Assembly: GCF_026571515.1 (NCBI RefSeq)
Contig: NW_026855673.1
Span: 1-64,000 of the forward strand
DNA length: 64,000 nucleotides
Source: Ruditapes philippinarum
Lineage: Eukaryota
Reading direction: 5' to 3'
The position numbers and the translations under genes are program-made. Below are positions 10,296 to 58,071 of the stretch, piece by piece. Position 1 is the stretch's first letter; every line of letters begins with the position of its first letter. The notes under the pieces are model-generated. The model ran no database searches. It saw nothing but the letters and a program-made list of their open reading frames with translations, and was not told the DNA's origin.

Positions 10296-13200
10296 TTATC
10301 TGACTTCAAATCTGAAAAATAAGTCTTTGTCCGGATGAACAACAGCGTGTGCCCAGTCGGTCACAAATCTCAAAGTTCGAGTCTCTGGTACCTTTGATAT
10401 TCTAAATCTATGCAACATAATGGCGGTGGCTATTTTAAGCTCCAGCCAAGCCAGATGCTGACCTATGCACACCCTTGAACCGGCGCCAAATGGTATGTAC
10501 ATTTTGGAGGACGTTCGTTCAGAATTGTCTAAAAATCTGAACGGAATAAATTCCTTGGATTTTGACCATTGTGTATGTGACCGGTGAATACCCCACGTAA
10601 ATGCTTTGATGTCCGTCTGTAATACATAAAAATAGAATTATCATTGTTTGTTAAATATACCATGTATTTTCAAATGAAAAACGATCAAAATACGCAAAAT
10701 TGTACATAGATTTTTTAGTGCGGAAATCACTTATTTAATTACCCACTGTGTCTTTTAGTATAATTATGACAATCTAGTTCTTTAATATAAGAATATCAAC
10801 TGAATTGTTGGTCAGGACAACTTTGAAATTGTAAAAATAAATACCAGCAAAGAGAAATATTTCCCCCTACAAGTGTGGTCGAATAGCTTTACGCATGATT
10901 TTTAAACAAAATAAAAAAATAACAGATTAATATTTTTTAGTTAAAAATAAGCAGCGAAAATTTAATTATGTTACATTTAGAATGGATGGCGGAAAAAAAT
11001 GACGATGATAAAAACGATCTAGTCTGGTTCCCTGCCTACATTTACTACGGAACGTAGTGTAAGGGGAAGGAATTCCAGACTAAATACGATCTTGCAGAGT
11101 GGCCGGACATGGAACTTTTTAAATGACTCAAACAAATAATAAACAGATACAAAGTGAATGTAGTACAAGTCAAATACTGTACATAAATTCGGACAGATAA
11201 ACATACGATGTTATCATGTATGTTTATAAAGGACATGCCTATAATTGGATATATTCTTTTTATACATACGCTCGCTGGAAAGGTAAAATCCCCGACATTG
11301 ACTTCCTCCAGCGTCTGTCTGCTGATGAATGGAGCTATAGGGTAAACACGTAGAACTTCTTTCAATACAGCTTCAAGCTTTGGTAGAGAGAGCGACGGGT
11401 CTTTATACAAAGCGTCTATATTATCGTCTGCTTCAGCTCGGAGTTCTTCCTGATAAAATGATGTCAAACATTTCAGAAATTACAAGGATCTTTTTTTTAA
11501 TTATGATGCTTAATATTCGATATAAATTCAATGGCAATTGTAAAATAACATAAGTTGCTTTGTGTGTTTCGAACAATGTTGCATTCTATGACATTTGGTA
11601 TGAAAATAGTTGTCGTCTGCTGAGAAGCGCGTGATATGACTTTGCCCGCACTATTTTACTCCGTTCTAGCATTTTAAAATGTCATCACGAGTATTGTTTT
11701 GGTCACTCTAGAAATTCCATCAGACCTTAAACTAGAGTTAAGGTAATTCATTCATCAATAGCTCGTGTTAATTCGACAAACCTCGTATCTTTCCGTATCT
11801 GATATTTCTTTAAAAAGCGTTTAGTTGCCTTTATTCTCCTGATCATGTTGACGCTTACTAGTATTTGGGTTTGACAAAAAAGACACGGAAAATTCAGAAT
11901 TATGCCGAACTTTCATTAGCTTCTAATGTTCTTATACGGTATAAATATTGAAAGGACGTTCAATGAGAAAAAATCAAAGTGATGAACTAGAAAGGAAAAA
12001 AATCCAAATACCTGAACATCCGTGTGTGTGGTTAGTAAGTAGACCAAGACGGGTATTGTTGCTGCAGTGGTCTCTGAGCCAGCCATTAAGAATAACTTCA
12101 TATTATCTCGAGCCTATATTAATATATGTATAAATTAATTAATATTAATATAATCTTAATTAATTTATATAATCTAACAAAATGACTATAGTCTTTAAGG
12201 ATAGCAACATTAACATACTTGGACATTAACGAGCTAAGAAACTCTTTTTGATAGATGAAAATATTCCGCAGATGGATTTCCATGTGGTCGTTTCCTAAAA
12301 ATATCTTTGAAAAATCAAGGGAATACATGTAATATTAAACATATACACCTATATGTGTTTATCATGTATATTAAATAACAGAAACATTCTGCGTTACAAT
12401 TCTTTCGAGGACCGACCTTAAGGTAATTATAACAACATAATTTTATTGTTTTCAAATTCTATAAAAATATTTCATTAGATACATGTGCATATAAGATATT
12501 TAAGTTGTTTCTAAAAATACAGGATTTATTTTCATCGAGTGGTATGAAAATAAATATTTCATGAGTGGCGGTAGCCAAGAGTGAAATATGATAATTTTCG
12601 TTGCACAAGATGCAAATTAATCTTGTTTTTAGAGAAAGAATTTGAATTTTGTGTTTATCATATACATTTTTATCTTTTTTTACATTAAAATTTGAAATAC
12701 TTCACCTTAAATTTTGTGTATTGGCTGAATTTGAAAGAAAGTAGATCGGCAAGACACCAGTGAAATTACGGGAAATATATTTCACTGCAGTGAAAAATAT
12801 GGCAAATGTAAATACACATCTTATTTCATCAATATTTCTTAATATATCATTTATAAGGATATAATAAAGCTTTATACTCTTTAATATAAAGTTTATTATT
12901 GAGTTGCTTTTTAAAATAGAAGTAGCTTATCAGCATTTAAATGTGAATGCACTACATGTATTTAATTGTAATTAGAATTTAAATAATATGATAGATTTGA
13001 TATAAAAGTTATTTTTTTCTTTTTTTTTTCATCTTGTGAAATGTTGGCCTACTTTGTAACAGATATCATTTACAACATCAAATTCAGTTGTTAATTGAAT
13101 ATTACTTATATAGCTTTTACGGGCCATCAAATTTAAGTTATCAAAATCGCATGACTTTTGCATTAAAGACAAAGCGGTTTAAAATCGCCAATATGAAGAC

Positions 13201-15700
13201 AAATTTGCAATAACTTTACGTACATATACTTATGTGAACGTTCCAGACCTATTTAACCTCTTATAACTTTTAATTGAGATGAAGTCAGAAATAGAGTATT
13301 CTTTAAAATACACATGTATAACCATACTGTCGCAAAATATATTACCAAATCAAAGCCACACGCTTCGTGTAGTTTAACGACCAGTCTTTTCTCCTCGTGA
13401 CGGTCTTCTATTTTTAGAGCATCTGCTAAGATTTCGGTTGTGAGTTTTTCAAACGTTGCATTTGCTTCTTTAAACTCTTCACTGTCGGCGGTGATCTCAG
13501 CCAATGCATAGCACCTATAATATATCAGTAAAAAAGATATAAAGTGAGATATTTTCTAAAAGGCAGAATGCTTCAATGTCAAAACTAATAAAAAGAAATT
13601 AAACGTAGAAGATAAATCTGAGAATCATAGTTTTAAAAGGCGTTTAAAGTATTGTAATATATGGTACAAGAATGTGCATGTTTGAGGATATTAGCAGAAA
13701 ATATGGAAATTATCTTAATAATTGAACATGAAAACATCGCCACAGAAATTAATTTAACATATAACATATATTATCAGTGAAAATCGGCGGCATTCTACAG
13801 TCAATACATGGCCAGACGAGGAAAATATATATACTTTACGTTATCATTTTGCCATAGACCTTATTTGTTTTAAGAATCTTTTATCTTTAGACTGAACCTG
13901 AAAATATTTTGTAAAGTCACTGATTCTGTGTGATATTTTACTGATATATTGCAGGAATTACCTTCAGATGAAAGTTACAAACTCCCCATATCAAAAAGCA
14001 TACCCCTGTGACTTTAAGCACTCCCTTAACCCTTCTCTATACACTTAAAAATGAAATCAGAAATAACTGAAAAATGTACAACAAACCTGTGTAATATAGT
14101 CATCAGACACTCTAACAACAGTTCTTGTTTTCCCTCTAGCGCGTGCATGTCTAGCTGTAGTAACATGTGACCTACCACGTCCATCGCCATACGCAGTGAC
14201 CAGTCCGTAACATTTACAAGCTGACCTGTGTAGCATGATTGTTTTATATAATTATGTAAAATATGTTTGCACCAAAATTACAAAATGCATACAAAATATA
14301 TATTTGCATGAAGGTGATATGAATTGTTATTTATAGAAACGAAATTAAGTTATTAATAGATACTAAATTTTTACTAAATTCAAGATATACAGGTTTTACG
14401 TCCGCCGTAACAATGGCAAATAATTTTTGCTAAATCAACTTCAATTAACAAAATAATAATTACCTGAGTTTGCTTCGTCCTCTATTTTATCACAAAATGT
14501 CTCTACATCTTTAATAATAAGGTTTCCTTTTTCCTCGAGAACAGATTTTCTAAAGATGGTCGCAATCGCTCTCCGTACTTCTGGACTCCGATTTGTGGAA
14601 CCAAGTATTGTGTCTTTTAATGGAGAGTTTTCTAAATAGTCATGTGCACCCTTTTCTAATTTGTTTATAACGGTCTGTGTTAATTTATGGTCGAATATAT
14701 ATACTTTATTATCAAACCGGAATAATCCGAATTTCTCGTAAAAATCCGTGAGAAACTCTAGTTTTAGTAAGTTATCGTCGTTGAACACTATATCTAGTAA
14801 TTTGTTAACAACAATGCCAGCCTCTGGAATGTGTCCCTTTTTATGCGGCAACTACAAATGGATATACATTGAAATCAAAGCACTGTATGTACTGATTTTA
14901 TTGTGGTCACAAGAAAGCGATATGTTTTTGGCATCTTGACATTACAGTTGTTTTATCTGAGCCATTAAACCTGTTTATTCATTATCAACAATTTTTCTAT
15001 TTAACAAAAAGCATCATAACAAATACTGTCACAGTGCAAGATGCATATAAACCTGAATAAAAATAATTTGTTAAATTTGTTCGATAATTTGTACGACATT
15101 ATTGTGTACAGAAGTATAAGATTTATTCTTTTTACAATAGATCTAAGTATTAATGTCTAAGCCACAACTTGTCGATCGATGTACACTGTTTGAACTAGAT
15201 TTAACCAACCACATCGTCGGATACCCACGGCCGAACCATTAACATTTATTTGATTACTTGACCAACCTCTATGAGTCGTTCTCAAGCCAAAACTTAATCT
15301 GTTGGTAATATCCGCACTACGGTGGCACAATGGTGACATGTGTGTGTTTTTATTTATCTCGTGCGCACGAGATACTACGTCGTGGCCACGAGTTACTAAG
15401 TCGTGGCCACGAGTTACTAAGTCATGGCCACGAGATAGCTAAGTCGTGGCCACGAGATACTGTGTCGTGGCCACGAGATAGCTAAGTCGTGGCCACGAGA
15501 TACAATGTCGTGACCACGAGTTACTAAGTCGTGGCCACGAGAAAGCTAAGTCGTGGCCACGAGATACTATGTCGTGGCCACGAGTTACTAATCAAATCAA
15601 ATTGATAATGTTTTTTATAGTGAAATAAAAGTCTTACCAGATACCGTAGACAGCTGAGAAGAGCAAGTATACACCTCGCTAGAAGCTTGAGTAAAGGCAT
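10296..15700 (-). CDS. Cytochrome P450, atypical and short (453 aa)
   Basis: Seven phase-consistent coding exons: 15638-15700, 14464-14851, 14087-14225, 13346-13514, 12012-12113, 11270-11449, 10296-10616 (1362 nt). I-helix AGSETT, K-helix EVLR, PFRF, heme motif FGAGSRVCIG. Probable non-coding 5' exon ends at 15952 (donor gag|gtatgt). Confidence 0.92.
12520..12800 (+). repeat. Interspersed repeat family with a gagtggc..gccacgagtgaaata hairpin motif
   Basis: Shares motif order with 36441-36880. A related motif lies at about 33350-33715. Confidence 0.5.
15355..15591. repeat. 20-bp tandem repeat containing the palindrome tcgtggccacga (about 11 copies) in the first coding intron of the CYP
   Basis: Units gtcgtggccacgag(tt/at)actaa are directly visible. 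Confidence 0.9.
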
Positions 15701-15951
15701 CTCTAGATAAAAAATAAATATTTAGATTTAATATCATTATAAGTAATAAATCATATGTTTATCAATACGAAAGTGATTCGTACGAAGTTTATATTATTAC
15801 GTTGCGCATAGCATAGATGCATTGAAGACAAACATGTGTATTCATTACACTATACATGTACATGTATATATATTTATGGTTTATTCTCCACGTAATGAAA
15901 TATGATAAAAACGACTTAATTGTAAGAAAAGAAATTTTTTTAGTTACATAC

Positions 15952-16270
15952 CTCTCCCGGAAATCCTGATTTTGCTATAAGATATAATGCATTGGATCTT
16001 GAATATTAAATGTACACGTGTGGCTATTTTTACCGTATATCTATTTTTCAGTATGTTTGTTTCCCATGGTCAAGGTATTAAGATAATTATCTGCATAGGT
16101 CAAAGGGGGTTTACACGGTATAGTATTTCTTCGTGTTAATGGGATGTCATGTCCACGTGTCTTTCGGTGTAGTAATTTTATCAGTGTTGTTGCATTACAA
16201 TCTCCAACGTTATCTAGGATTGCAAACAGTTTAGGAATACCCGCAGTATTCGTCGCTCAAACGTCTCAAA
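15952..16270. promoter_or_regulatory. Putative bidirectional promoter shared by the CYP (-) and the SAM transferase (+)
   Basis: About 320 bp separate the CYP 5'UTR donor (15950-51) and the transferase ATG (16271). CACGTG E-boxes at 16015 and 16154; DR1-like AGGTCAaAGGGGG at 16097. Confidence 0.5.
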
Positions 16271-17476
16271 ATGACTGAAAGTACTGGCGTAAAAGCTGAA
16301 TCTACGAACGCGATCGTAACTTACGATGGGATTTTCAAAGGCATGTACGATGAGAAACTGCAAGAAATGTTCCAGGAAGGTCGCCGGAAGTTTGCTGGCG
16401 GAGATTGGCCTGGTGGAATGAAAATATTTGAAAATATGTTGGAGATTGCAAGTGATAAATCAAAGGATAGAAAAACTCTTGAGGAAATAATGAACGAGTT
16501 GAAACGATACGAGGCGTGCAGAATCGAACCTGGAACCCAGCCAGCCAAAAGCATAGACTGGTCAGCAGTTGCAGACAGACCGTTAGAGCGACTTCATGAA
16601 TCTTTCTTCGGATTACCACAAGGTGTGTTCTTCTTGGATGTCGGGCGTCATGGGAAACCTGGATCAGTACGTCTTGTCGGGAAAAAACTTCTCTCGGACT
16701 ATTTTCTAGCTTTCAAAATTCCTGAACTTTTCTGTAGTTTGGTGAAAGCTGATATGATATTAGGCTTATATGTTGACCAACGTATGAGTGACTCAAATGT
16801 AACAATTTTCTATAATCCAATAGAAAAATCTGAAAAACTTCATGTTATGCAGAAAATAATGTCAAATGGAGGAGCAGACGCCGAATTGATATTTCCGTTT
16901 CCGCTTATGCGCAGTACGACGCGATGTGAATGGGGTTCCCCACCGGAAGGATGGGAAGTTGACGACTCTTATGATATCATGCTAGGATGCGGTGAGGAAC
17001 GGATACGAGCTTATTCAATTCAGTTTCTACGATCTGTTGGACTTGATAAACCAATACTATACGACCCTGCTTGTTCGACAGGGGTATTTTTATCCACGCT
17101 TCAGCAAGCAATTCCCGGAAGTTACACAATCGGCCAAGATCTAAGTCAGCAGATGGCAAATTTCGCAAAAGACCGAGTGGACGAAGCCCATTGTGCAAAC
17201 GCTCTGGATCCAAAGATAAAACTCGGTACCGCCGATGCAGTATACATAAGATTTCTAAATTCGGAGGTGATAAAGACGTGTGAGGCAGAAGAACTTTTGT
17301 CGGCGTTGTTGCCTACAGTTAAAAAAGGCGGATACATAATAACATTTGGTCATACCCCTGTTTTACTATCATCGTCAAATTTTAGACAGCTGTCGGGATT
17401 TCAATTCAAGCAGTCCGTCGGAGTGGCTGTTGACAAGTGTGGTATTTTTCAATACTACGTGATCCAAAAGTCTTAA
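16271..17476 (+). CDS. Intronless class I SAM-dependent transferase, Nat/isonocardicin synthase-like (putative 3-amino-3-carboxypropyl transferase)
   Basis: Uninterrupted 401-aa ORF with caaaATG context and AATAAA near 17623. SAM motif I LYDPACSTG, motif II IGQDLS, then DAVYIRFLN, GGYIITFGHTPVL and IFQYYVIQK. The SAM fold is clear; the Nat similarity is recalled and was not searched. Confidence 0.8.
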   Translation: MTESTGVKAESTNAIVTYDGIFKGMYDEKLQEMFQEGRRKFAGGDWPGGMKIFENMLEIASDKSKDRKTLEEIMNELKRYEACRIEPGTQPAKSIDWSAVADRPLERLHESFFGLPQGVFFLDVGRHGKPGSVRLVGKKLLSDYFLAFKIPELFCSLVKADMILGLYVDQRMSDSNVTIFYNPIEKSEKLHVMQKIMSNGGADAELIFPFPLMRSTTRCEWGSPPEGWEVDDSYDIMLGCGEERIRAYSIQFLRSVGLDKPILYDPACSTGVFLSTLQQAIPGSYTIGQDLSQQMANFAKDRVDEAHCANALDPKIKLGTADAVYIRFLNSEVIKTCEAEELLSALLPTVKKGGYIITFGHTPVLLSSSNFRQLSGFQFKQSVGVAVDKCGIFQYYVIQKS

Positions 17477-17792
17477 AATAATAATGCAATTTATTATTTA
17501 TAGCTGTTCACTTTACAGACATTTCTGTCCAGCAAGAAATTCTGCAAATTGTGCTTTAGATGATGTTTGTCTATTAAATTTGAAGTTGATTGATGAAAGA
17601 AATTTATATGTTGCCTGTACTCAATAAAATAAGTTGAAATATTCACTGTTCTATTGATTTTTGCCATTTTTGTACCGTTTGTCTTCCGTTATTGAATATT
17701 CACATAATCCTGGTACGTATAACTATATTATGTGTCGTACACACATTTTCTTATGCATGAAGACTGTTTGACCATGGGTTAATGGAGAGAAC

Positions 17793-17935
17793 AATGTCAA
17801 ATGGAGAGGCAGACGTCGAATTGATATTTCCGTTTCCGCTTCCGTGCAGTACGACACGATGTGAATGGGGTTCCCCACCGGAAAGATGGGAAGATGGCGA
17901 GTCTTATGATATCATGCTCGGATGTGGCGAGGAAC
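17793..17935 (+). pseudogene. Partial diverged duplicate of the SAM transferase (copy of about 16858-17000)
   Basis: MSNGEADVELIFPFPLPCSTTRCEWGSPPERWEDGESYDIMLGCGEE aligns without gaps to MSNGGADAELIFPFPLMRSTTRCEWGSPPEGWEVDDSYDIMLGCGEE. Confidence 0.85.
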
Positions 17936-20292: not shown

Positions 20293-23200
20293 TCAGCTTT
20301 TAATGAACAACGTGTGATAACCATTTGAAAACAAGAACTTGATAAGTATTAGCCCTAAAATTACGATAGCAAGTTTCTTAAAAAGTTCTATCCAGCCGTC
20401 GTAGAGTCCGTCTCGTTCATGGTCCCCTGCTTTTCTTGTTTGCATTGGGTACCAGGTCTTTTCCTCAACGCGACTGATGGCATTTCTTGCACCTTCCCAC
20501 TTTCCAGGACCTTCAAGTCTCCACTGCGGTGGTGTTGCGGGGTTGAATACCACCTTTGACCATAGATTGATATCTTTGAAAAATAGTTTCCAAAGATTTG
20601 GCCTACATCCGATGAACTTAGCGACCTCGTCTATATATTGAATGAAATATATTTGCGTCGTATATCTCGGTGAGTCAACGTATTTCTGTTTCACAAATTC
20701 CCGCCATTTCTCTACAGCGTCCAATCTTTTAGCGTTCGTTGGCAGTTGACTGCGACCAGCAAACACGTGTGCGGCCCATCTTGCTTGAGCTTCAAGTACT
20801 GGGGGCAGGGGACCAAACGGCTGGACTAGTCCAATAACTGCTAATGTAGATGGGTTTAGTTCTGTTGGCCAAACCAGCTTATAAAGATACGAAAAGTGAC
20901 CATCCCTTTTTATAATGGACTCATCAAGAAATGGAAAGCTATAAACATATCCTGTTCCTAAAACAACAACATCGATGTCCTTGATCTGTGTGCCATCAAC
21001 AAAAACAGCGCCATCTTCAGTAAAATGTTTGACGTCATTGTGTATACTTATAGCACCAAGAAGAATTCTATTTGGCAAGTCGTCACTTATGGTAACACCG
21101 GCAGACTCAAAATTGAAGTTTGGGGACAGGCCATAGTTTCGGTGCCTGTAGCGATGATTTAACTTGTAGAAATGGTACGGTCTCATGAGTTTCCATGATA
21201 ACGACTGCCGGAAGCGCGTGATAGCGATATGGTCGTATGGAACTCCGAAGTCTGCTGCACGTTGAATTGTGTACGTTCCACGACGTGTACTCATGTAGAC
21301 CTAGAGATACATAAACGTCTGTGTAAACAGAAATAGATGTGTTATAAAACATTTAATCGTGTATTTTTATATACTTTATTATGGCTGAAATAGGCAGCCA
21401 TTTTCTTAAACTACAAATGATCATTCTTTTATAAATTATGTAAATGACATAGCTACTCATTTGAAAAAACGATTTTGCAAAATGAGGAATTTTGGCACAC
21501 AATAAATCATATAGTTAATGCAATTGAAATATGGTATTGTTAATGTTGTATTAGTTGAGCAGTATTATATGAAAATATATCAAATAATCCTCACGTGTTT
21601 AGCATGACGACTTAGCTCACATCCGACATCCGCAGCCGAATTTCCTATCCCTACAATAAGTACATTTAGATTCTCAAAACCTCTGAAATCCTGAAAAGCA
21701 AATTGGATTTGTGCTTAAAAGTTAACAGCAAAAAGTCATATATTTTTGTATTTACGCTTCAGCATAAATATAAATGGTACATAAATGGTACCGATATTCT
21801 AAAATATAAAAATGCACATCATTTATTAGTTCTATGTCAGGAATAAATGATTTAGCAAAAAGGCTTCAGTTTACAGAAAAATTATTTTCTTTAAATATTA
21901 TGCTTCAGAAAATAAATAATACTGACAATAAACAAAGTAAGGCAGAATATAACTTAAGCAATACAAAGTATTTCAATTCTTATTACAATACTCGTATGTA
22001 TGATAAAAGATTTAAATGGTAAAAGACATACACTCGAATAATGCTCGCTACTGTAGCATCAACTCTTCATGTTTGCTTGTTTGTTTAAATGATTGGGTTT
22101 CTTGTAATTGCTATATTGCTTAGAGTGGGTAGTTTGGTAGACTGTTATTTGATGTTGTTGTGTTTTTGTTTATTTGTTTTTGTCCATGTGTTGTTGTAAT
22201 TGCTATACATGTACTGTTTCCAGTGGGGTAGTTTGGTAGACTGTTATTTGATGTTGTTGTGTTGTTGTTTATTTTTTGTTGTCCATTTGTTGCTGAAGTT
22301 GTTGTTCTTGTAGTAGAAGTTGTTGTTGTTGTTGTTGATGACGATGATTATGATGATAATGATGGTGTTGATAATGATGACGATGATGATGTTGATGATG
22401 AAGATGATGATGTTGATGATGACGATGAAGATGATGATGATAATGATGATGTTGGCGGTTGTTTCAGTTTACTTATTTGGACGAAAGAAGTACCTACCTT
22501 ATAGTCATGCGTATGTAGAACCTTGCCTTTAAACTTCTCCAGTCCTGGTAAACTTGGTTTGTTAGGTTCCGTCAGATGACCATTGGCAATCATTACAAAG
22601 TCAAACTTTTCTTTACTTGTTTTGTTACTTTTCAAATCTCTAGTGGTAACAATCCATTGGCCGGTCTCTTCAAAATTATCTGCTTTTTCTACTTTTATGA
22701 CTTCAGTCTGGAATAGTGTTTCAAATTACAAAGAATGCATTACAAAATGAAAGATGTAACATTAATAAATTAATAAAAGATAAATGAATAAATAGTCAGT
22801 TAAACAATCAAAAATGATAATTATCTAATTATCATTAATCATTAATTAATTAATTATTCCAAAATGAATGATATAAAAATAAATAAATCAATCAATTGAT
22901 CAATATCAATTGTCAAAACAGTCGATCTTAAGTTCCAAGCAAAGGATTTTAGTTTTGGTAAATCGTTTAAAGTTGTGCACATGTCACACTGATTAAAAAG
23001 GTCGATTTACAAATATCGTAGCTTAAAACTACCTGTAATTTGATATAGTTCATCAAGTCAAAGTTCTCGGCATAGAGTTCGAGGTATTTCTTGAAGTGTG
23101 TATGATGCATGAAGTTGGGAAAGTCTTTCGGTATTGGGAAGTCACTATAACACGTCATCTCTTTACTCGTGTTGATACTGCACGAGTTATAGAGGCTAGG

Positions 23201-29737: not shown

Positions 29738-32700
29738 TTAAACTGGTTTTATTTTGAGATAAAGTCCGTTTTTACTTCTCAATATCAGAATGCATTCTGG
29801 TTCAGCTTTTCTTTCAGGGTCAAGGTCAAGTTTGAAATGACGTAACAGTTCGCAGATAACGACCTTGACCTGTGTCAGTGCAAAGTGTTGCCCTATACAA
29901 TTTCTGAAATAAAAATTAAAATATGAAAGAATAAATTCCTAATAAACAAATGTTTTGATGCATATCATATCTCTGCCACATGTTTAATTAGATCTACAAA
30001 TGTAGGTTATAGCCAAGGTCACACAAACACTGTCAATGTCATATGATAACTTTCCAGCTTAACTGGTGAGGGACCAACTCAAAAAACACTATGTTTGATA
30101 GTTCATGTAAAAGCAAGAACTGGAGTAGAACCACTGACTTGTATAGCCTTCTCATAATTATGTAAAAATTGATGACCCTATAGCGTTATTAAAACAATAG
30201 GTGTGACCATGACAACAGGCCAAGTGATTTGAAGTCAGCCACTTTTATCACATGACCACAGAGGCCTAATTTGTATAACTGCTATATATACTCTCGTAGA
30301 TATCAAGTTAATAATATTTGTTTAATATTGAATTAAATGGAACCCTTAATAATTTGGATTACCCTGAAGAAAACTTTATTTTCAAATGCAATATCACAGA
30401 TATTGGTATTATTGTCAAAAGGCTGAAAAAGGTCCATTTTTGTCACTTTTTGCATATAAAAAGATGACTCAAACACAAAATTTTCATAAATAATGATGCT
30501 ATTTAAATATTGAGCAGGTGGCAAGAAAACAGCTAGAATATATTAAACACTAACCTTGGTCCTATAGAAAATGGGAGATGATACACTGAGGATATTTTAC
30601 TACCATTTGTAAATCTATCTGGGTCAAACTCCTGAAAGGTCAACAAAAGGTCAAGGTCAAAAAAATATGTAACTTCTAAAATTATGCTTATCTGAATACC
30701 AGTATTCAATAAAAAAGTGACCATATGACTCCTGTTCACAAAGAAAAAGATCAGGGTCAAATGTTCTTGCATTTATTTTAATGCTATATGAAACTTACAT
30801 ATTAGGCTAAAAATAATATGATCCATATATAAAATGTAAAACGTTGCTGAATTTGCATTAAACGCAATGAAACAAACACATTTTGGAATAAAATTTAAGA
30901 ATAAAAATGCAAAATACAAAAATCACTGGGTCAAAATAAGGATCAAATTTAGGATCAAGTATTTGGGTCAATTTGAAATTAGCGTATCATGTGAATAAAT
31001 CATGAAATCTTTATAAACTTCCACCATCTTATATTCATACGATTGGATGCCAAAACATACCACTGTTTTGTCAGTCTGTACAAACAAACAGAATGACAGA
31101 CAAGGGCAAATCTGTATAAGCTAACCCTCTAGTTGTCCGGTAAATTTAGTGTACTTTTTTGTAGAGTTTGAGGTTACACCAACCCTGTGTAAAAATTATA
31201 ATGCCACTTTACAGCATTACTGATCTATAGTCCCAAGCATGCAGTAGAATTACCTTCCTGTTAGCTAGATGAAACAGTTTTTTCACATGATAGAATAGAA
31301 TGATAGTTTCACAAAAAAAACAAAGGTAGATTTAAAAGTTGGAAGTAGTATGGTAATAATTTAAGGCAAAATTGTGCTTACATTAGGATTATCCCAGACT
31401 TCAGGATCTCTTTGCACTGCAAACAGTGAGACAGTAATTCTCATATCTGAAATAATAATGGGAGAATAAAGTTTTAATGTTAAAAATCATAGTGGTAGAA
31501 AAGTGCTTATCTAAGAAACTTTCAGGAGAATAAAAGTTATACATGTGCATTGTTAAATGAGAAAGTTTGGCTATAAGGTTTACCTATAAAAAATAGGTGT
31601 AAAAATTACAGGAAAATATTTAGTAAAAACAATGGGATATTTTTGGTTTTCTCAACTATACAAAATCTTATACATATTTTATATCATTGATATATTTTAT
31701 CATTTAATTGACATTGCTGCAATTAAAAATTGTGCTGTCATATTAAGCAACTGCAAGAAGCATTTTTGTTTTGATCTGGAAGACAAAAAGTGCTATAAAA
31801 TATTCATTATTTTTTCATCAAGTTTCTATTTATCTTTTTTTCCTCAGAATTGGGGCAAAAATGTTGTTTGGGATAATAAAACTTAAAATGCCACATACCC
31901 TGTGGTATGCTTAAAACTAGATTTTACATCAGCAACAACAGTCAAGCATTAGAAATCATGCTAAAAATAGATTACCTTTAGGTATGACACGGCCATCAGG
32001 CAGGTCGAGATCTCTCTCCAGACAACGTGATATGTTTGGTACAGCAGGAAACAATCTCATGCTTTCCTGTATACATGCATACATGTACTCTAACTTCGTA
32101 AGATCATCCCTGAACAAAATATAGATTATTTCTGTCACTATTACATAAGTATAGTAAGATATCACAACAAGCATTTTTTTTCCATATGAAGGACAGCAGT
32201 TTTTTACTTAATAAAAAATGTTTACACATTCATATCCATTCAACCTTTAATAGAGGATACTGAATGAGTGTAGGTTCAATACTGAATTTACTGGACAAGT
32301 TCAATAAATTTAGTAATGAAGCTTCATGAATATAATAGTCTGTTTATCACATACTTGTATCCAAAATAACTTTAACGGTAAAAAATAATTGCAGAGGGGA
32401 CCCTCAGTAATCCTAAACACATATTATGCTAATTTATCCTGTTAATCATGTTGTATTACAAACATTACAATGTATATTCAATAGAAATGGTGGCTTAGTG
32501 AATAAGGTGGTCACCACTTAACCATGAGAACCTGTGTTCAAGCCCGGATGGGGTTGCGACCATAATGTTCACATTTTAACCATGAGATCAAGAGTTCAAG
32601 CCCTGATGTGGTCGCAACCATAATGTTCACCTCTTAACCATGAGATGGAGAGTTCAAGCCCTGATGGGGTCGGGACAATAATTCCTCAAATTAATGATAC

Positions 32701-34288
32701 CAGTACTGGTTTTTGTTCCAGATAATTCACAGAACACTGGATTAAATAAGCTTAAGACTTTCATCAGAATCAAGCTAAAAAAAATATTATTTAACTTAAC
32801 TAAGAAGTAAATAACTAGAGCATACCATGACAGTATTTTAGTTTTGCCGACAACTTTGAGAATTTCTTCTCTACACCTGTCCTGGCAGGCTTGATGTTTA
32901 GCCAGGTTATACAGACACCAGGATATTGTGCTGGCTGTTGAGTCGTGACCTTCAAACATAAACGTGTCAACCTCATCACGAATCTCCTGATCGGTCATGC
33001 CGTCACCATCATTGTCCTTAATAAATAAATAGTCAAAGATTTATAAGATAATAAATAATGGTAATTTTAATGACTTGTAGTAAATTAAATAATTATTTAA
33101 TCAATTGTAATATAAAGATGAAATGAGTTATGATATAATGAATAATGATATAATTAGTAATGATATAACTAAACAATGATATACATGTAAATAAATATAA
33201 TGATGAAAAAAGAAATGATGTATTTAATAATGATTTAAAGAATAAATAATGATGTTATGAATAATAATCAATTAAATAATTATCAATTGAATAATGATGT
33301 TATGAATAATGGTCAAAGAAATAATAATGATGTAATGAACAATGATCAATTATATATTCTAACACGACAGAAAATGTGTGTTATTATGCAATAATGTCAC
33401 AGTTGACGTTCTATATTTAGATATGCGACGTAATCATCATACATGTGACGTAACCACTAAAAGAATCCGACGCGCTGAAAATAAGTACGGGAACAAATCA
33501 GGCACAATTTCGCTTAATATCAGGTACGGCAGCATTTATTTGTTGATGTCATGTTAGAATCGAAATAATATATCCAAATTGGTGATTTTATCGCTTGATA
33601 ACATCAGTTTTTCATTCGGATGCGCATCATTATATCACTCGGGCTATGCCCTCGTGATATAATTTGTCACATTCAAACTCCAAACAGTGATGTTATTGAG
33701 CGGGATATATTATATTTCTTAAATGATGTTATAAATAACAGTCAATAGAATGAATTGATATAATGAATAATCATCAAAAATATGAACAATGATGTAATGA
33801 TGCTATGCATACTTTCCATTTTATTTGTGACCAATCATTCTTTAACTAGAAAAAACAATCATTTTATCTGTTGTGGAAGATACAGCCTTATATTCAGAAT
33901 AAGGTTAAATTCCTTGAAACATTGAAAACTTTCATTATATGCTACCAAATTAATAAGACTTACCTTTGCAGTAAGTAGGATATCTAAGAAATCAACATTT
34001 CTTGCTCCCTTTGCCTCCGACTTCAACAACTGTTTTCTCTTTTTTATTATTTTCTCTGAATGCTCATGAATAGCATGGCATGCTTGTTTAAATTTCTTTC
34101 TGAAATATATTATATGTTATACATATTACATTTTGAAAGTAATACACCTTAACCCCTGCTGGTGTGTTGGTCTGTCTGAATGTCTGAGACAAGTATTGAT
34201 CATGTATGTATGAAATGAATAGCCCTTTAACATTAATTTTATAATATCAAAAAAGCTTCTATCAAAGTTGTAGTAAATGCTTTTACTG

Positions 34289-34326
<38 letters not shown>

Positions 34327-37300
34327 TTTTTGATTTGCAAAATGGTAACGGTGTATATGACTTTGAGTGTATTTTAAATAATAAATTATTTTTTATTAAC
34401 AAAAGTCACTGTTTCATGTCATTTCCTTACGTAAGTGCAGTAACTGGTTAAGTCCTTCTAAATTTAATAGGATTTAACCAATTTAATAGGATTTAACCAG
34501 TTATTGCGCTTAGGTGGCAATTTGTCATATTTTACTTGTTAAACTATGCCTAAATAATCATTACTTTACTTTTTTGATATCATATTTTGTATATTTGATG
34601 TAGAATTATTGACAAAATGAAGGCAATTTTTTACCCATTTTCTGTAAAGTTATAATAGATGAAGTCATAGTGGTGTAGAGGCTTGATGATTCTTTTGACA
34701 ATAAGTTCCGATACATCGTAAACACCCTGAATATATGGATGCCTTGTTCTGAAATAAAATATGTTTCAGTTGAGTTTTACGTCACACCTTGAACACAGTA
34801 CATGTATAAGTCATATGGCAACTTTCCAGCTTTACTAATGGAGAAAGACCTTAGGTGCCCTTCCATACATTATTTCAGGCACCAATGGGCATGTGAGTAG
34901 AATAACCGATGTTCCGTAAAACAAATTATGTAAAAAATTTAATCAATTAAATACAAAATTCATTCTGCTAGACAATGATGTCTATTTCCACATTTCAAAC
35001 TTATTTTTGGTTATAACTTTTTTAATTATTTTTCACAGTGCAATTTTTTTTCTTGTACAAAATTAATCATATTCACTAAAATAAAACAATGCAATATAAA
35101 AATCTTTTATTCTGTAAGAATCAAAGTAAATTTGATGTTCTTTCACTATTTACATTTGTACATTTATATCTGAAATATTCATGATATATATTGTCTTAAT
35201 TATTCTTTGTCTTCATTTTATTTTCCACAGGATGTATAATTATGTAGTAAAAAAAATAGTTTAGACAAAAAAAATTGAAGCAAAAATAAAATAAAACATA
35301 CACAAACAAAATCATTTGATCTGGGGGTTGACTGCAAAAATGCAGTAACTTAATATACGAAATAAAGAAGGACTAATATTACAGTCTTGTGGTCAACCCT
35401 CTAAAATTTCACTCTAATCAACTAAAAAAACTTTACTCAAATCATCAAATGATGTATAATTATTTAAGTATTTACTTTTCATTTTGGCAGTTGCTATGGT
35501 AACCAAAAAGACATTGCATCATACTGTCTAATGTAAGAAGACTTATGTGATGAAACACCTCTTCTGAACCAGCTGATTTTCGCCATTTATCCTGAAAGAT
35601 CATTGAACATCTACATGTGTATATATGTAATATTTAAAGTGAATTGTACCATAATGGAAAGTTTGTAATACCATGAATAATTATGTTGATAGTATTTAAA
35701 GCTACATGCCTCCAGATGAGTCTCAATAAAATCAAACTTGAGAAAAATGTACTAGGAATAGTAAAAGGATTCAATATTCAAGTAATATTTTACATTTTTT
35801 GTGCGATTAATGACTGATTTTTCAGTATTTACAACTATATTTCTACTGCGTTACTAACGCAGTTACTAACGCAGTAAGGGCTATTTATGTATATTTTGAC
35901 CACTTTTGGTAATTAACGTAGGTTGTAAGCACCAATGATAATGTGTATGTTGCTGCCTTTTGGTTACTCCACAATATTACACATTCAAATAAATTTTCAA
36001 AAATTTCATGAAAATAAGTAAAGAAATATTTCATAAGAATACTTAAATGATACATTTCTATTGCTCTTATCAATACATGTATCTGAATTTCAGAAATGTA
36101 TACTAACTGACAGTCAAAGAGATTTCAATATATTATTGTTCAGGCAATGTTTATTTCTATCAATTAGACAGTAACAGAAACAAGCATCAGTAAATCATTA
36201 AATTGGGTGAAAACCATTCTGGCCGATTAATAAGGCTAATTGATGACTCAGAGCACCCCTTAGCAAATGGCTAGATTATGATAATTAACACTTAAACTTA
36301 CAATTAGAACTTTTGTACTCCTGCTGAATACAATGACATAATTTTTTAGGATGTCAGCATGAAAAGCAGGTGTCATCAATCTTCTGTTTCTATCCCATTT
36401 TTTACCTTTACTCAACAACAGCCCATCTCCTGTAATATATAGAGGATATTTGTTTAGTTCAGTGTAAGATCGGAATATATTTCACCGAGTGAGCACCAAA
36501 AGGTATATTTCACGAGTGGCGCAGCCACGAGTGAAATATGAACTTTTGGTGTTCACAAGGTGAAATATATTTTGATCTTACACTAAACTAAACAAATTTT
36601 CTTTTTATTATATGCAAAGAAACGTTTTAAAAAGACATTAAACCTAATACTGAATGAAAAGCGCGCCAAATAATAATACAACGTGACGTCATTTACGACG
36701 TCACGTCATTAAGTTGGTACCCAGTTCTGTGCACGCTGGTATTTCAGTGAAACAACGTAAGGGGCTTAAATTCAAAACAGTGAAATTATCAAAGTGGTAA
36801 TTTCACTGTTTCAAACAGTGAAATTACCAGTTTTTATATCACTGATATATTTCTATAAACCACCGAAAAGCATGTAATAAATCATTGTTTTCTACATTGT
36901 AAACTTAAATTTAGATAATACCACTTCATACAGTGGCATAAAAGTGACATTTGCAATTTGTTTTTTTTTTGTTGTTTTTTTACACTTATGTTTTTTTTTA
37001 TTACATATGTATTTTTTGTGTTTTCATACATATTTTTTTTTTTTTTTTTTTTTTCGTACATGTTTTATTTTAGTTTTGTATACATTTGTTCTTTTAGATT
37101 TGCATACATATTTTTTTTCAGTTAGCAAAACTAAAAAAAAATGTGTATGAAAAACTAAAATAAAATATGTATGCAAAACTAAAATAAAATATGTACAAAA
37201 AACAAAACAAAAATACGTATGAAAAGCAAAAATAAAATAAGTATGAGAAACAAAAAAAAAGAATGAAAAAATTTATTGAAAACATACAGATCTCAGGTAA

Positions 37301-40300
37301 AAATAAATTCAATTCTTAATAATAACTTATTTTCTGAAAGAATAATAGTTGAAAATGAAAATCTATCAAAAATCTGGAAAAGTTGAAGTCTCTCGGAAGA
37401 AATGGGGAAAAGAGTACATGAAAATTGTTGACTTGGTTTGACTGAGTCTGTTCATGAGAAAAACTGAAAAACTGCAACACTCCTTACCACTCTAAATATC
37501 TTAAATGGAATTCCATCTTACAATCTGAACACCCTGGACCATTTTTATCATTTTTAGGGGAAAATTTCAATATATGTTCAGACTGAATAATGAAATGTAC
37601 AGACCATGATGTGCCGACACAAAGGTGCTGACTGATCTTGGTCTGTACTAGTCACATTGTTAGAATCTGTTGCAATGTATTCTAAGGGTTATAATCTGTC
37701 AAAGCTCTCTGTAATGGAGTTAACATAAAAAGTCACCGACTATAATTATTTTTCCAATCCACTGTGTACATTGTGTTCCACGTGGAATGTTTCATTGAGA
37801 AATAAAGTTCAACCTTCAAAGGTTTTTAATTTGATATGTCCATCATAAGATTATAAAGTTATAAATAACAAACTTGAAATGATCATCAAGCTGATTAAAA
37901 ACTGAAGAATTTACTCTATTTAGTGAAAATAAATTAAGCATTATAATTCTGCTTGGCAAATTTTTTCAAAATCTTTATAAGTTTAAGTATCGATACATAT
38001 ATCAACTTACCTATCCATGGACGCATCAATGCATATGAAAATTCATCTTTTGGATCTGAAAAATATGAAATTACCGATAATACAAAGTGATGCAGGTATA
38101 TTTAATAAGATATGTATTTTAAAAATAACTTACTTATATATTTTTAAGGATTTGACATTCCTAGCATTTCATAGTTAAATATACATGCATATGAAAAGGG
38201 AATATAAATAAAATATAAAGAAGTATTAAATAGTTGTTTTACAGGCAACATTGTGTGTTATATCATCACCTTAGTGCAGTAATAAGTTTACTCCTTATAT
38301 GATTAAATAGGAGTTAACCTGTTACTGCACTGTGACAACCATATAGCCTAGACACAAGTCATTCCTGAAAACTGGAGTGACAAACAGAACAAAAGACAGA
38401 CAAGGTTAAGTGTAAAACAATATCTGTTTCCTTTTCTACATGAATTTTACTTTACCATGCAGAATATGAATGGAGTTGTCCATCACATCTGTAAATCATT
38501 TTTAGGTAAAAATTCTAAATGTATAGACCAAAATCAGACCACACAAAAATGCTGGCTAATCATGGCCTGCACTTGGGACTAGCTTAGTTTGAATCATTTG
38601 CATACAAATGCTGACAGAATCACAGGCGCTCGGTCAAATTATCATAAAATAATCTCCCCTTGATCATCAAGAACAAAATAACTATCCAGCACCCGTTCAC
38701 TACATAAAATATGTATTGTTGTAATTTTGTTCTTGATGATCAAGAGGAGATTATTTCATTATATTTGATCATTATTAGCGAAGCAAATGTGACGAATGCC
38801 TGTGGGCAGAATACTAAAATTTGATACCCCAAATCTGTAATCACGTTCAATGTCAAGTTCAACATCCTACCTGTACCAGATAATACAACTTTTGCTGTGC
38901 CTGGATGGACAGATATTAACTGAGCCTCAGCCGGTCCGGTCCAAGCTGGAAACGCCCCTGGATACTCGTGAGCATAATCAGCCATGCGTAGCAACCCCGC
39001 ATAATCTCCAGTTATCTATAAAATCAAATGATTTTTTCTTTTACAATATTAGATAATTATGTAAGACTTAGTTTTGTATAAATATCAATATTTCAATATT
39101 AGTTATTTTTTAAAACATCAATACATCAATGCTTAAGTATTTACAAATGAAGCGGTTTCATTGCTAAATTTGTAATACTAAATTTTCTTTTTCATGTGAC
39201 AGATCAGTGTCATACTGTGAGCTTTTTACCCTTTAAATTAATGTTCGGTTTTCAATAAAAGATGCTATCCTGCAAGCTTATGGGAAGTCAGATGCCAATC
39301 TTGGCTTTGATATAATAATGCAAAGATGGGTTTGCAATTATACTATCCAAATAATGGTTAAATATTGCCAGCAACCATTGTTGTGATAATGCAAGGATTT
39401 TTTAATGACATAAAATCTTATATTTGTTTTACTACAGTAATTTAATATAGAGTTTCAATTCAAATTAAGACAAAGGGAATAGTCAAATCAATATCTATCC
39501 CCTAAAATTAAGAGGATCACCTTTAATGCTGAAATTTTACTTTAAAGTTGGCTAATCACCTTTAAGATTTCAGTTTGAAAGGAATTGTGGGAAATAACAG
39601 GTGATGGCCAATGATAACAGTATAACATTGCTGACCATTACTTAATCTGTTTATTATCTTTATCATTCGAGATGACCAGGTCATTTAGTGTATATTAATA
39701 AATATTCATGATTTAGTATAATCTGGATCTTAACCCTTGACCTTCTGAATTTGTATAATGGATTTGTCCAGCTTTGAATTTGGAACAGTTCATTCAAACT
39801 TTAAGGGATTTCAGTAACAAAATATTTATTATGAACAGTATAAAGCCTTGCCTGATGGCATGAATGTGTAAGCTTGCCTGGCTCTATACTGTATGCTAAT
39901 TATGGCTTGGCTTATCAGCAGGAAAAGACTTAATAAGGATGATTGTCAGTATTGTGATAGTAATGTTATCATGTTGTACACTTGAGTGCACTCAAACAAA
40001 AGTTAAACACATGGTGCCCTCACAAAGCATGGTTCGCCTATTATAGTAAATAGCCCTCAAAGTTTCAGCTTTACTTTTCAAAATTGAAAAAAGTAAGTAA
40101 GGTATAAACCAAATTAAATGATATTCGTTATTAAATAATTATGACAAAATTTATTGATTCACAGTCAAATTTTTCACTGTATCAAGATTGGATTAGGTCT
40201 TGGGAAAAGTGTAATAAATTAAAAGCCTAACTTTAACAATTACAGTTACTTAATCATAAGGGTAGCAGTGGCCTAGTGGTTAAGGCGTCTGCCTCTCAAG

Positions 40301-40772
40301 TCTCAACCCAGAGATCATGGGTTGGAGCCCTACTCAAGTAGAAACCATACTCAACACCAGTACGGAGGGGACTCAAAAGTGATAAATATTGCAAGAACTT
40401 GTTTCATAAATGAGCTTCAATAAATATGTTTAAACCTAAACTTAATACATAATTATGCTAAAAGTATTAAAGACGGTAAAACAATAATAACTTTTACTTT
40501 ACTTAAAATATGTATATGGAACAAACAGCTAAATATACAAACCACAAATTTATCTCATCAAACATCTATATATAGAAATGGGTAGAGCAAATCAAAAGAA
40601 AACTTACCTGATGTGTATTCCCACCAAAGAATTCCGGTTTTGGACCAGGAAAATCTTTAAATGCTGCCTGCAATCTCCGTCTCTTTAAAAACACCTCAAA
40701 AACCTTCTTTAACACGAAGTACAGTAACACCAGTGGTATATAGTTCCATAATGGTGATGCCACAAAACTCAT
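29738..40772 (-). CDS. CYP4: Cytochrome P450 family 4 (CYP4F/4B-like), 493 aa
   Basis: Twelve phase-consistent exons: 40608-40772, 38871-39015, 38011-38055, 36302-36429, 35476-35591, 34635-34748, 33964-34099, 32826-33016, 31976-32109, 31382-31446, 30555-30631, 29738-29903 (1482 nt). Motifs [55 protein letters not shown]. Confidence 0.95.
32490..32680 (+). repeat. tRNA-like SINE head with its B-box segment tandemly triplicated (about 58-bp units)
   Basis: ttaaccatgaga...gttcaagccc..gatg.ggt.gc.accataatgttcac occurs three times after ggtggcttagtgaataagg. Confidence 0.55.
36441..36880 (+). repeat. Interspersed repeat of the same family as 12520-12800
   Basis: Internal inverted repeat tttgtttagttcagtgtaagatc / gatcttacactaaactaaacaaa flanking gagtggcgcagccacgagtgaaata. 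Confidence 0.55.
40259..40435 (+). mobile_element. tRNA-derived SINE fragment
   Basis: A-box tggcctagtggttaagg and a degenerate B-box ggttggagccc; no intact cloverleaf. Confidence 0.5.

Positions 40773-57318: not shown

Positions 57319-58071
<753 letters not shown>

What the first reader, a model, noticed from the sequence alone, without database searches (positions are those of the whole stretch)
10296..40772. Candidate animal biosynthetic gene cluster: atypical CYP, Nat-like SAM transferase, FMO and CYP4
Seen: four small-molecule-modifying enzyme genes from three unrelated superfamilies lie consecutively with no other gene between them. The core three (CYP, transferase, FMO) fit in 14 kb, the CYP and transferase are head-to-head, and the two CYPs are very divergent, so this is not a tandem paralogue array. 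Established: in the nocardicin A pathway of Nocardia uniformis, Nat transfers the 3-amino-3-carboxypropyl (ACP) group of SAM to a phenolic oxygen and the P450 NocL N-oxidises an amine to an oxime; FMOs are also N/S-oxygenases. Inference: the locus may make or tailor an ACP-modified, oxidised metabolite, for example with the CYP hydroxylating an acceptor that is then ACP-alkylated. Non-homologous enzyme clusters are rare in animals. No scaffold-forming enzyme (NRPS, PKS, terpene synthase) is in the window.
Basis: partly seen in the sequence, partly recalled or inferred. Interest (0 to 1): 0.88.

Follow-up and report, generated by a model that had tools for sequence, protein, structure and literature searches.

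The report
Manila clam bursatellin-oxazinin tailoring gene cluster
The P450, SAM transferase and flavin monooxygenase genes are the Manila clam's copy of the already published mollusc "bur-ox" cluster for tyrosine-derived nitrile metabolites, and the neighbouring CYP4 gene has no evidence of belonging to it.

Summary
Four intact enzyme genes lie in a row at 10296-40772, with only repeats and one small pseudogene fragment between them.

The window is Ruditapes philippinarum, the Manila clam. Three of the genes match the "bur-ox" bursatellin/oxazinin cluster of Venugopalan & Schmidt, JACS 2025 (PMC11869996):
- **P450:** an atypical 453-aa enzyme in 7 exons.
- **Transferase (ACT):** an intronless 401-aa homologue of Nat (isonocardicin synthase).
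- **FMO:** a 545-aa flavin monooxygenase in 5 exons.

Orthology rests on several results:
- In a tree the transferase falls in the clade that holds the Mytilus cluster ACTs.
- The P450's only close relatives are the Mytilus P450s that sit beside those ACTs.
- The FMO belongs to a mollusc-only orthogroup that includes the Mytilus cluster FMOs.
- Accession numbers and contig lengths indicate ACT/FMO, ACT/P450 or ACT/NRPS linkage in mussels, unionids and scallops, and put ACT and FMO on one chromosome in a pearl oyster.

The scaffold enzyme, an intronless Fmt-A-T-R NRPS, is present in this genome but on another contig, at least about 129 kb away. The paper also detected oxazinin-1 in Manila clam extract.

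The CYP4 is an ordinary microsomal CYP4-clan gene. It is not part of the published cluster, and I could not test its linkage in other species.

Verdict: real, correctly read in its chemistry, but already known.

The parts
10296..15700 (-). Atypical bur-ox-type cytochrome P450 gene. It has 7 exons (15700-15638, 14851-14464, 14225-14087, 13514-13346, 12113-12012, 11449-11270, 10616-10296) and encodes 453 aa with a short 21-aa hydrophobic leader.
   Evidence: Pfam p450 matches one exon. The exons align to Mytilus P450 P0235 at 52-65% identity. Splice sites and frame give 1362 nt, with AGSETTA, EVLR and FGAGSRVCIG motifs. The gene is single copy in the genome. Exon 2 has only 12 relatives among 1.8 billion representative proteins.
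15701..16270 (.). A 570-bp divergent spacer between the ATGs of the P450 and the transferase, presumably a bidirectional promoter.
   Evidence: Positions of the two start codons. Promoter function is inferred, not tested.
16271..17476 (+). Intronless SAM-dependent aminocarboxypropyltransferase (ACT), 401 aa. It is a homologue of Nat (isonocardicin synthase) and an orthologue of the Mytilus bur-ox ACT.
   Evidence: Pfam Methyltransf_25/11 at aa 265-357. Residues 100-400 align to isonocardicin synthase 8ZHU, E 1.2e-43. It is 49-52% identical to the Mytilus cluster ACTs and falls in the same starred clade. GC and GC3 are host-like, and poly(A) signals lie at 17573 and 17623.
17782..17935 (+). Pseudogene fragment, a partial duplicate of the ACT gene (nt 577-730).
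   Evidence: 89% DNA identity over 154 bp. 71% protein identity to aa 192-247.
20293..24085 (-). Flavin-containing monooxygenase gene of the bur-ox orthogroup. It has 5 exons (24085-~23971, ~23244-23033, 22707-22498, 21690-~21590, ~21299-20293) and encodes 545 aa with a C-terminal membrane anchor.
   Evidence: Pfam FMO-like, E 2e-84. 100% identical to RefSeq 'flavin-containing monooxygenase 5-like [Ruditapes philippinarum]'. Mollusc orthologues are 49-81% identical, generic FMOs at most 45%. It is the only FMO on this contig and has a distinct fused last exon.
29741..40772 (-). Microsomal CYP4-clan P450 gene of about 12 exons. It is a neighbour; membership of the pathway is not shown.
   Evidence: Open frames carry an N-terminal anchor plus PGP, the I-helix [11 protein letters not shown], ExxR, and the heme loop FSIGPRNCIG. 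Pfam p450. The best solved relative is CYP4B1. There is no close paralogue in the genome.

Best explanation
Positions 10296-24085 hold the Manila clam (Ruditapes philippinarum) copy of the tailoring part of the published mollusc bur-ox (bursatellin-oxazinin) biosynthetic cluster.

The pathway as published:
1. An Fmt-A-T-R NRPS activates tyrosine, N-formylates it and releases it by four-electron reduction as N-formyl-tyrosinol. The reductase step was shown for an oyster construct. In this genome the NRPS is encoded on another contig.
2. The ACT uses SAM to put a 3-amino-3-carboxypropyl group on the phenol, giving a homoserine ether. This was shown for the Mytilus californianus orthologue.
3. 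The FMO is proposed to oxidise and decarboxylate that amino-acid side chain to the nitrile.
4. The atypical P450 is proposed to hydroxylate the benzylic carbon.

Steps 3 and 4 are inferred, both in the paper and here. The P450 and ACT are transcribed divergently from a 570-bp spacer, which suggests co-regulation (inferred). The CYP4 gene downstream is most likely an unrelated neighbour.
For: - Species: the FMO and NRPS are 100% identical to R. philippinarum RefSeq proteins.
- ACT: homologous to isonocardicin synthase 8ZHU over aa 100-400, E 1.2e-43. In a tree of 33 sequences it lies in the starred clade (97/97) that holds the Mytilus cluster ACTs and the Crassostrea, scallop, unionid and Haliotis proteins. 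A second mollusc clade is separate.
- P450: exon 2 has only 12 relatives in 1.8 billion representatives. The best full-length one is Mytilus VDI72211. Its cluster members VDI72208/09/11, CAG2199364 and XP_071162179/80 have accession numbers next to the Mytilus ACTs VDI72207, CAG2199365 and XP_071162181.
- FMO: its orthogroup includes the Mytilus FMOs VDI72201, CAG2199369, CAC5390679/80 and XP_071162169/171, which lie beside the Mytilus ACT and NRPS genes.
- Linkage elsewhere: ACT and FMO are two locus tags apart in Potamilus (CHS0354_024261/024263). NRPS, ACT and FMO are ACJMK2_036132/036135/036137 in Sinanodonta. ACT and FMO share a 675,784-bp Mizuhopecten scaffold.
- NRPS: the genome has an intact Fmt-A-T-R NRPS ORF of 1642 aa.
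- Literature: PMC11869996 describes exactly this gene set, shows ACT and reductase activity, and detects oxazinin-1 in Manila clam extract.
Against: - Only one FMO is present here, against two in Mytilus.
- The NRPS is not physically clustered in this assembly. It lies on contig C2246, at least 119 kb from either contig end, so at least about 129 kb from the trio.
- No expression data could be obtained.
Linkage in other species rests on accession order and shared contig lengths.
- No activity of the clam enzymes themselves has been measured. The FMO and P450 roles are predictions even in the paper.
Confidence: 0.88

Rival explanations
1. All four genes, including the CYP4, form the working cluster in this clam. 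The CYP4 would have been recruited as an extra tailoring oxygenase, for example doing the benzylic hydroxylation or standing in for the second FMO that mussels have.
For: - The CYP4 is the next gene after the FMO, on the same strand, 5.6 kb away, with only repeats between them.
- It has no close paralogue in the genome, so it is not part of a detoxification array.
- This clam has one FMO where Mytilus has two.
Against: - The published cluster lists only one P450, the atypical one (PMC11869996).
- The CYP4 is an ordinary membrane-anchored, multi-exon animal CYP4-clan gene.
- No conserved linkage or co-expression could be tested.
Confidence: 0.08
2. The neighbourhood is a chance grouping of xenobiotic-metabolising genes around a horizontally acquired transferase, with no shared pathway.
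For: P450s and FMOs are large families. This genome has at least a dozen FMO genes, including a tandem array on another contig.
Against: - The specific orthologues are linked in several other bivalve orders.
- The P450 is single copy with a very narrow family.
- The FMO belongs to a distinct mollusc-only orthogroup.
- The published biochemistry and metabolite data fit the pathway.
Confidence: 0.03
3. The transferase is an ordinary methyltransferase and the locus methylates rather than aminocarboxypropylates its substrate.
For: Pfam sees only generic methyltransferase domains, and NCBIfam gives only weak methyltransferase matches.
Against: - It aligns end to end with isonocardicin synthase, E 1.2e-43, and shares the motifs YD-ACSTG-FL, TIGQDLS, DEAHC and GHTPVL.
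- Its Mytilus orthologue transfers the aminocarboxypropyl group in vitro (PMC11869996).
Confidence: 0.01

Closest known systems
bur-ox (bursatellin-oxazinin) biosynthetic gene cluster of molluscs (Venugopalan & Schmidt, J Am Chem Soc 2025, PMC11869996)
   Same: Orthologous ACT, orthologous atypical P450 next to the ACT, and an orthologous animal-type FMO close by. An Fmt-A-T-R NRPS is present in the genome. The product family (oxazinin-1) is reported from this species.
   Different: There is one FMO instead of two. The NRPS lies on a different contig, at least about 129 kb away, rather than inside the cluster as in Mytilus. There is one ACT plus a 154-bp ACT fragment, where Mytilus has two ACT genes. 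A CYP4 gene abuts the FMO.
Nat (isonocardicin synthase) with NocL in the nocardicin A cluster of Nocardia uniformis
   Same: The transferase is a true homologue of Nat (PDB 8ZHU, E 1.2e-43). Both use the same chemistry: SAM-dependent 3-amino-3-carboxypropyl transfer to a phenolic oxygen, followed by oxidation.
   Different: The clam protein carries about 70-100 extra N-terminal residues. The substrate is a tyrosinol, not a beta-lactam peptide. The clam P450 is not related to NocL beyond the superfamily. The ACP group is proposed to be converted to a nitrile, not kept.
Chloramphenicol core logic (CmlP A-T-R NRPS plus CmlA diiron beta-hydroxylase), and the bacterial ACT cassettes found here
   Same: An aromatic amino acid is activated on an A-T-R enzyme, beta-hydroxylated and reductively released to an amino-diol. 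Bacterial homologues of the ACT sit in cassettes with A-T-R, CmlA-like and sometimes formyltransferase genes.
   Different: The bacterial cassettes use CmlA-type and TauD-type oxygenases and an ATP-grasp enzyme. None of the 80 loci has a clear relative of the bur-ox P450 (one weak 24%-identity match, L094) and none has the FMO. Their products are unknown to me.

Membership tests
bur-ox cluster | ACT orthologous to the Mytilus cluster aminocarboxypropyltransferase | tested here: met
   Same starred clade (97/97) as the Mytilus VDI72207/VDI72202-type ACTs. 49-52% identity over 391 aa. A paralogue clade (100/100), including this genome's C14205 copy, is separate.
bur-ox cluster | Atypical P450 lying next to the ACT | tested here: met
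   Head-to-head with the ACT, ATGs 570 bp apart. The closest full-length relative is Mytilus VDI72211, whose cluster members have accession numbers adjacent to the Mytilus ACTs. The paper calls this P450 'globular'; here it has a 21-aa hydrophobic leader, and I did not test membrane binding.
bur-ox cluster | Animal-type FMO(s) linked to the ACT | tested here: met
   One FMO lies 2.8 kb downstream of the ACT. Its 90% cluster neighbours include the Mytilus cluster FMOs VDI72201, CAG2199369 and CAC5390679/80. There is only one copy here, against two in Mytilus.
bur-ox cluster | Fmt-A-T-R NRPS physically clustered with the tailoring genes | tested here: not met
   The NRPS exists as an intact 1642-aa ORF with Formyl_trans_N, AMP-binding, PP-binding and NAD_binding_4 domains. 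It lies on contig C2246 at 119-124 kb of 369 kb, not on C4160. In Dreissena the NRPS and FMO are also 130-230 accession numbers apart on one chromosome. The paper accepts 'partial/full machinery'.
bur-ox cluster | Organism makes bursatellin/oxazinin metabolites | not testable with these tools
   PMC11869996 section 10 reports oxazinin-1 in Manila clam extract by LC-MS co-elution.
Nat-type SAM aminocarboxypropyltransferase | Full-length homology to isonocardicin synthase, with a class I SAM-binding core | tested here: met
   phmmer against PDB: 8ZHU/8ZHV/9UPQ is the only hit, E 1.2e-43, query 100-400 against chain 32-325. Pfam Methyltransf_25/11.
Nat-type SAM aminocarboxypropyltransferase | Transfers the 3-amino-3-carboxypropyl group rather than methyl | not testable with these tools
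   Shown for the Mytilus californianus orthologue in PMC11869996. Inferred for the clam enzyme by orthology.
Flavin-containing monooxygenase (class B) | FMO-like domain with FAD and NADPH GxGxxG/A motifs and the FxGxxxHxxxY motif | tested here: met
   PF00743, E 2e-84. GAGVAG, GIGNSA and [12 protein letters not shown] are all seen in the model.
CYP4 clan | CYP4-type I-helix (EGHDTT-like) and microsomal N-terminal anchor | tested here: met
   [11 protein letters not shown]; a hydrophobic N-terminus followed by PGP. Best solved relative is CYP4B1, E 3e-15.

The most novel reading that the evidence does not exclude
The reductive NRPS plus ACT pair of the mollusc pathway may descend from a bacterial cassette that already encoded the same logic. 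I found cassettes with A-T-R, ACT, a beta-hydroxylase and sometimes a formyltransferase in about 21 of 80 bacterial loci. One of them has A-T-R and ACT fused in a single 1204-aa ORF. On this reading the animal replaced the bacterial CmlA/TauD-type oxygenases with its own P450 and FMO. In heterodont clams such as this one, the tailoring trio stayed tightly linked after the NRPS moved away, possibly with the adjacent CYP4 recruited.
Probability: 0.3. Interest if true: 0.55.

Novelty: already known. Interest (0 to 1): 0.25.

Why it matters
But it has been described, partly characterised biochemically, and re-found by a dedicated cluster-mining pipeline (PMC12833800).

What this window adds is modest:
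- A precise gene model for the Manila clam P450, including its missed first exon and the 570-bp divergent spacer shared with the ACT.
- Evidence that in this clam the tailoring trio is kept together while the NRPS lies elsewhere.
- A list of bacterial cassettes with parallel enzymatic logic. These could guide work on the still unassigned hydroxylation and nitrile-forming steps.

Tried and rejected
I used accession-number order and shared contig lengths instead.
I have no RNA evidence for expression, co-expression or the P450's first exon.
- **Spliced models:**, I searched them exon by exon only. As a result the CYP4's relatives could not be retrieved, because its exons are too short for the length-limited search.
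- **Protein atlas search** with the Mytilus P450 orthologue gave only generic eukaryotic P450 clusters. It says nothing for or against the paper's 'bacteria-like' claim.
- **P450 heme exon** finds CYP97, CYP17, CYP4B1 and CYP3A as its best solved relatives. This does not settle the P450's origin either.
- **bur-ox P450 and FMO in 80 bacterial ACT loci:** no FMO match, and for the P450 only one weak match (L094, 24% identity, E 1e-7).
- **Bacterial donor of the ACT:** none stands out. All bacterial homologues are 32-37% identical.
- **Legionellales genomes**, searched for an Fmt-A-T-R next to the ACT, were inconclusive.
- **Around the NRPS and the ACT paralogue:** no bur-ox-type gene in the roughly 15-17 kb fetched around each.
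- **A second FMO in the window:** none.
- **A paper on the bacterial cassette:** none found.
- The window has no N, and I took nothing for human sequence.
Full report
**What is in the sequence**

The window has no gaps. It is the first 64 kb of a 165-kb contig of a 1.41-Gb genome. A 100% match of the FMO to 'flavin-containing monooxygenase 5-like [Ruditapes philippinarum]' identifies the animal as the Manila clam.

On the minus strand at 10296-15700 lies a P450 gene. Its six larger exons align to a 458-aa Mytilus protein at 52-65% identity. Canonical splice sites give exons 14851-14464, 14225-14087, 13514-13346, 12113-12012, 11449-11270 and 10616-10296.

Relatives carry about 20-29 further N-terminal residues. 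A 63-nt exon at 15700-15638 (ATG, hydrophobic 21 aa, GTAAGA donor) joins in frame to the TTTGTAG acceptor at 14851. The seven exons sum to 1362 nt, 453 aa. The model has the I-helix AGSETTA, EVLR, and the heme loop FGAGSRVCIG.

The transferase is a single 401-aa ORF at 16271-17476 on the plus strand. Its ATG is 570 bp from the P450's ATG, in divergent orientation.

The FMO (24085-20293, minus strand) has five exons that reproduce the 545-aa RefSeq protein exactly.

The CYP4 (40772-29741, minus strand) has about twelve exons. It has a membrane anchor followed by PGP, the I-helix [11 protein letters not shown] and the heme loop FSIGPRNCIG. CYP4B1 is its best solved relative.

Between the genes I found only the following:
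- a 21-bp tandem repeat inside P450 intron 1;
- 43-bp and 145-bp tandem arrays;
- a 154-bp fragment of the transferase gene at 17782-17935;
- ORFs without any Pfam match;
- no tRNA or Rfam RNA.

**What the transferase is**

Pfam sees only generic methyltransferase domains. A search of solved structures finds a single hit, isonocardicin synthase (8ZHU), E 1.2e-43. It covers residues 100-400 and shares the motifs around ACSTG, TIGQDLS, DEAHC and GHTPVL.

Homologues at 49-82% identity are mollusc proteins, several named 'isonocardicin synthase-like'. Weaker ones come from a rotifer and from many bacteria.

The gene's GC and GC3 match the neighbouring FMO's coding sequence, and poly(A) signals follow the stop codon. 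It is a resident animal gene, not contamination.

**The literature match**

A full-text search for 'isonocardicin synthase' returned Venugopalan & Schmidt, J Am Chem Soc 2025 (PMC11869996). That paper describes the mollusc 'bur-ox' cluster, which consists of:
- an Fmt-A-T-R NRPS;
- an aminocarboxypropyltransferase (ACT) homologous to isonocardicin synthase;
- an atypical P450 predicted to lack the usual membrane anchor;
- two animal-type FMOs.

The authors showed that the reductase domain gives tyrosinols, and that the Mytilus californianus ACT puts the aminocarboxypropyl group of SAM on the tyrosinol phenol. They propose that the FMOs form the nitrile and the P450 the hydroxyl of bursatellin.

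They report the genes in most bivalve genomes and detect oxazinin-1 in Manila clam extract. A later paper re-found the cluster with an automated pipeline (PMC12833800).

**Testing membership**

*ACT.* In a maximum-likelihood tree of 33 sequences, the window's protein sits in a well-supported clade (97/97). That clade also holds the two Mytilus ACT types and the Crassostrea, Pinctada, scallop, unionid, ark-shell and abalone proteins. A second mollusc clade (100/100) holds a paralogue that this genome carries on contig C14205, 39% identical. The rotifer and bacterial sequences lie outside both.

*P450.* It is single copy in the genome. Exon 2 has only 12 relatives among 1.8 billion representative proteins. 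The best full-length one is Mytilus galloprovincialis VDI72211. Members of that cluster carry accession numbers adjacent to the Mytilus ACTs:

| P450 | Adjacent ACT |
|---|---|
| VDI72208/09/11 | VDI72207 |
| CAG2199364 | CAG2199365 |
| XP_071162179/80 | XP_071162181 |

One further relative comes from a hemichordate.

*FMO.* Relatives split sharply. Mollusc proteins are 49-81% identical, and generic FMOs of vertebrates and other clams are at most 45%. The Mytilus member of the orthogroup clusters with VDI72201, CAG2199369, CAC5390679/80 and XP_071162169/171. These accessions lie beside the Mytilus ACT and NRPS genes.

Linkage recurs in other species:
- Potamilus: CHS0354_024261 (ACT) and 024263 (FMO).
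- Sinanodonta: ACJMK2_036132 (NRPS), 036135 (ACT) and 036137 (FMO).
- Mizuhopecten: ACT and FMO on one 675,784-bp scaffold, and a second ACT with the NRPS on a 312,184-bp scaffold.
- An unnamed assembly: ACT and FMO on one 889,310-bp contig.

*NRPS.* This genome has an uninterrupted 1642-aa ORF with formyltransferase, adenylation, carrier and reductase domains. It is identical to a RefSeq 'linear gramicidin synthase subunit D-like' protein and 56% identical to the Mytilus californianus NRPS.

It lies at 119-124 kb of the 369-kb contig C2246, while the trio lies 10-24 kb from the start of C4160. The two are therefore at least about 129 kb apart, if they are linked at all. No FMO, ACT or bur-ox P450 lies in the sequence fetched around the NRPS, about 9 kb on one side and 3 kb on the other.

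In Dreissena the NRPS and FMO are on one chromosome but 130-230 accession numbers apart. A loosened NRPS may therefore be usual in heterodont clams.

**The CYP4**

The published cluster does not include it. It is a typical microsomal animal gene. Its only unusual feature is the lack of a close paralogue in the genome.

Spliced models had to be searched exon by exon and its exons are short, so I could not retrieve its orthologues or test linkage. I treat it as a neighbour, with a small chance that it was recruited.

**How it most likely works**

- *Shown elsewhere:* reductive release of N-acyl-tyrosinol by the NRPS, and aminocarboxypropylation of the phenol by the ACT.
- *Inferred:* the clam enzymes do the same. 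The FMO N-oxidises and decarboxylates the homoserine ether to the cyanoethyl ether. The atypical P450 hydroxylates the benzylic carbon. The divergent 570-bp spacer co-regulates the P450 and ACT.
- *Not obtained:* any expression data.

**A side observation on origin**

I fetched 80 bacterial loci that encode ACT homologues. In 29 of them an adenylation-domain gene lies within 10 kb.

About 21 share a cassette of a TauD-type dioxygenase, an ATP-grasp enzyme, an A-T-(R) NRPS-like enzyme, the ACT and a CmlA-type diiron beta-hydroxylase. They come from several actinomycete genera, Xenorhabdus, Burkholderia, Rickettsiella and some uncultured lineages.

In one uncultured bacterium (L042), A-T-R and ACT are fused in a 1204-aa ORF. 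That ORF is followed by a transporter, a CmlA-like enzyme and a formyltransferase.

None of the loci has a clear relative of the bur-ox P450 (one weak 24%-identity match, L094) and none has the FMO. No bacterial ACT is notably closer to the mollusc one than the rest. This parallels the bur-ox logic and is compatible with transfer of NRPS and ACT together, but it does not prove it. I found no paper on the cassette.

**Verdict**

The finding is real and its chemistry was well guessed, but it is already known. Three of the four genes are the Manila clam's bur-ox tailoring genes, and the CYP4 is unproven.

Noticed in passing
L019-L098 (bacterial loci), e.g. L042:5152-14500, L050:544-7664, L054:3292-12024: About 21 of 80 bacterial loci with an ACT homologue share a cassette: TauD-type dioxygenase, ATP-grasp enzyme, A-T-(R) NRPS-like enzyme, ACT and a CmlA-type beta-hydroxylase. 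In L042, A-T-R and ACT are one 1204-aa ORF, followed by an MFS transporter, a CmlA-like enzyme and a formyltransferase. The logic parallels bur-ox. I do not know the product.
   Followed up: partly
G000:C14205:148493-149629 (L018:4407-5693, minus strand): A second intronless ACT-like gene, 39% identical to the window's. It belongs to a separate, well-supported mollusc paralogue clade with Pinctada, Mizuhopecten and Potamilus members. No bur-ox-type gene lies in the roughly 15 kb fetched around it. Its function is unknown.
   Followed up: partly
G000:C2246:119147-124075 (L017:1648-6576, minus strand): The Fmt-A-T-R NRPS of the pathway is an uninterrupted, intronless 1642-aa ORF on a different contig from the tailoring genes.
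   Followed up: yes
protein P0242 (not in the window): One of only three full-length relatives of the bur-ox P450's N-terminal exon is from a hemichordate (Glandiceps talaboti, annotated 'cytochrome P450 4X1-like'). This P450 family may therefore not be confined to molluscs.
   Followed up: no
window 4920-10035 (+): A multi-exon gene ends 260 bp from the P450's stop codon, convergent with it. Its ORFs (8227-8463, 9008-9256, 9808-10035) have no Pfam match. I did not test whether it is linked to bur-ox in other species.
   Followed up: no
window 15359-15591, 18479-18824 and 25978-27214: Tandem repeat arrays: a 21-bp unit inside P450 intron 1, a 43-bp unit between the ACT and the FMO, and a 145-bp unit (about 8 copies) between the FMO and the CYP4.
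   Followed up: no
window 57343-58074 (+): An exon encoding an SH3 domain followed by the start of a protein kinase domain, as in mixed-lineage kinases. It is unrelated to the cluster.
   Followed up: no
G000:C12228:137000-227000: A tandem array of roughly nine generic FMO genes lies on another contig. Their exon structure differs from that of the single bur-ox FMO.
   Followed up: no
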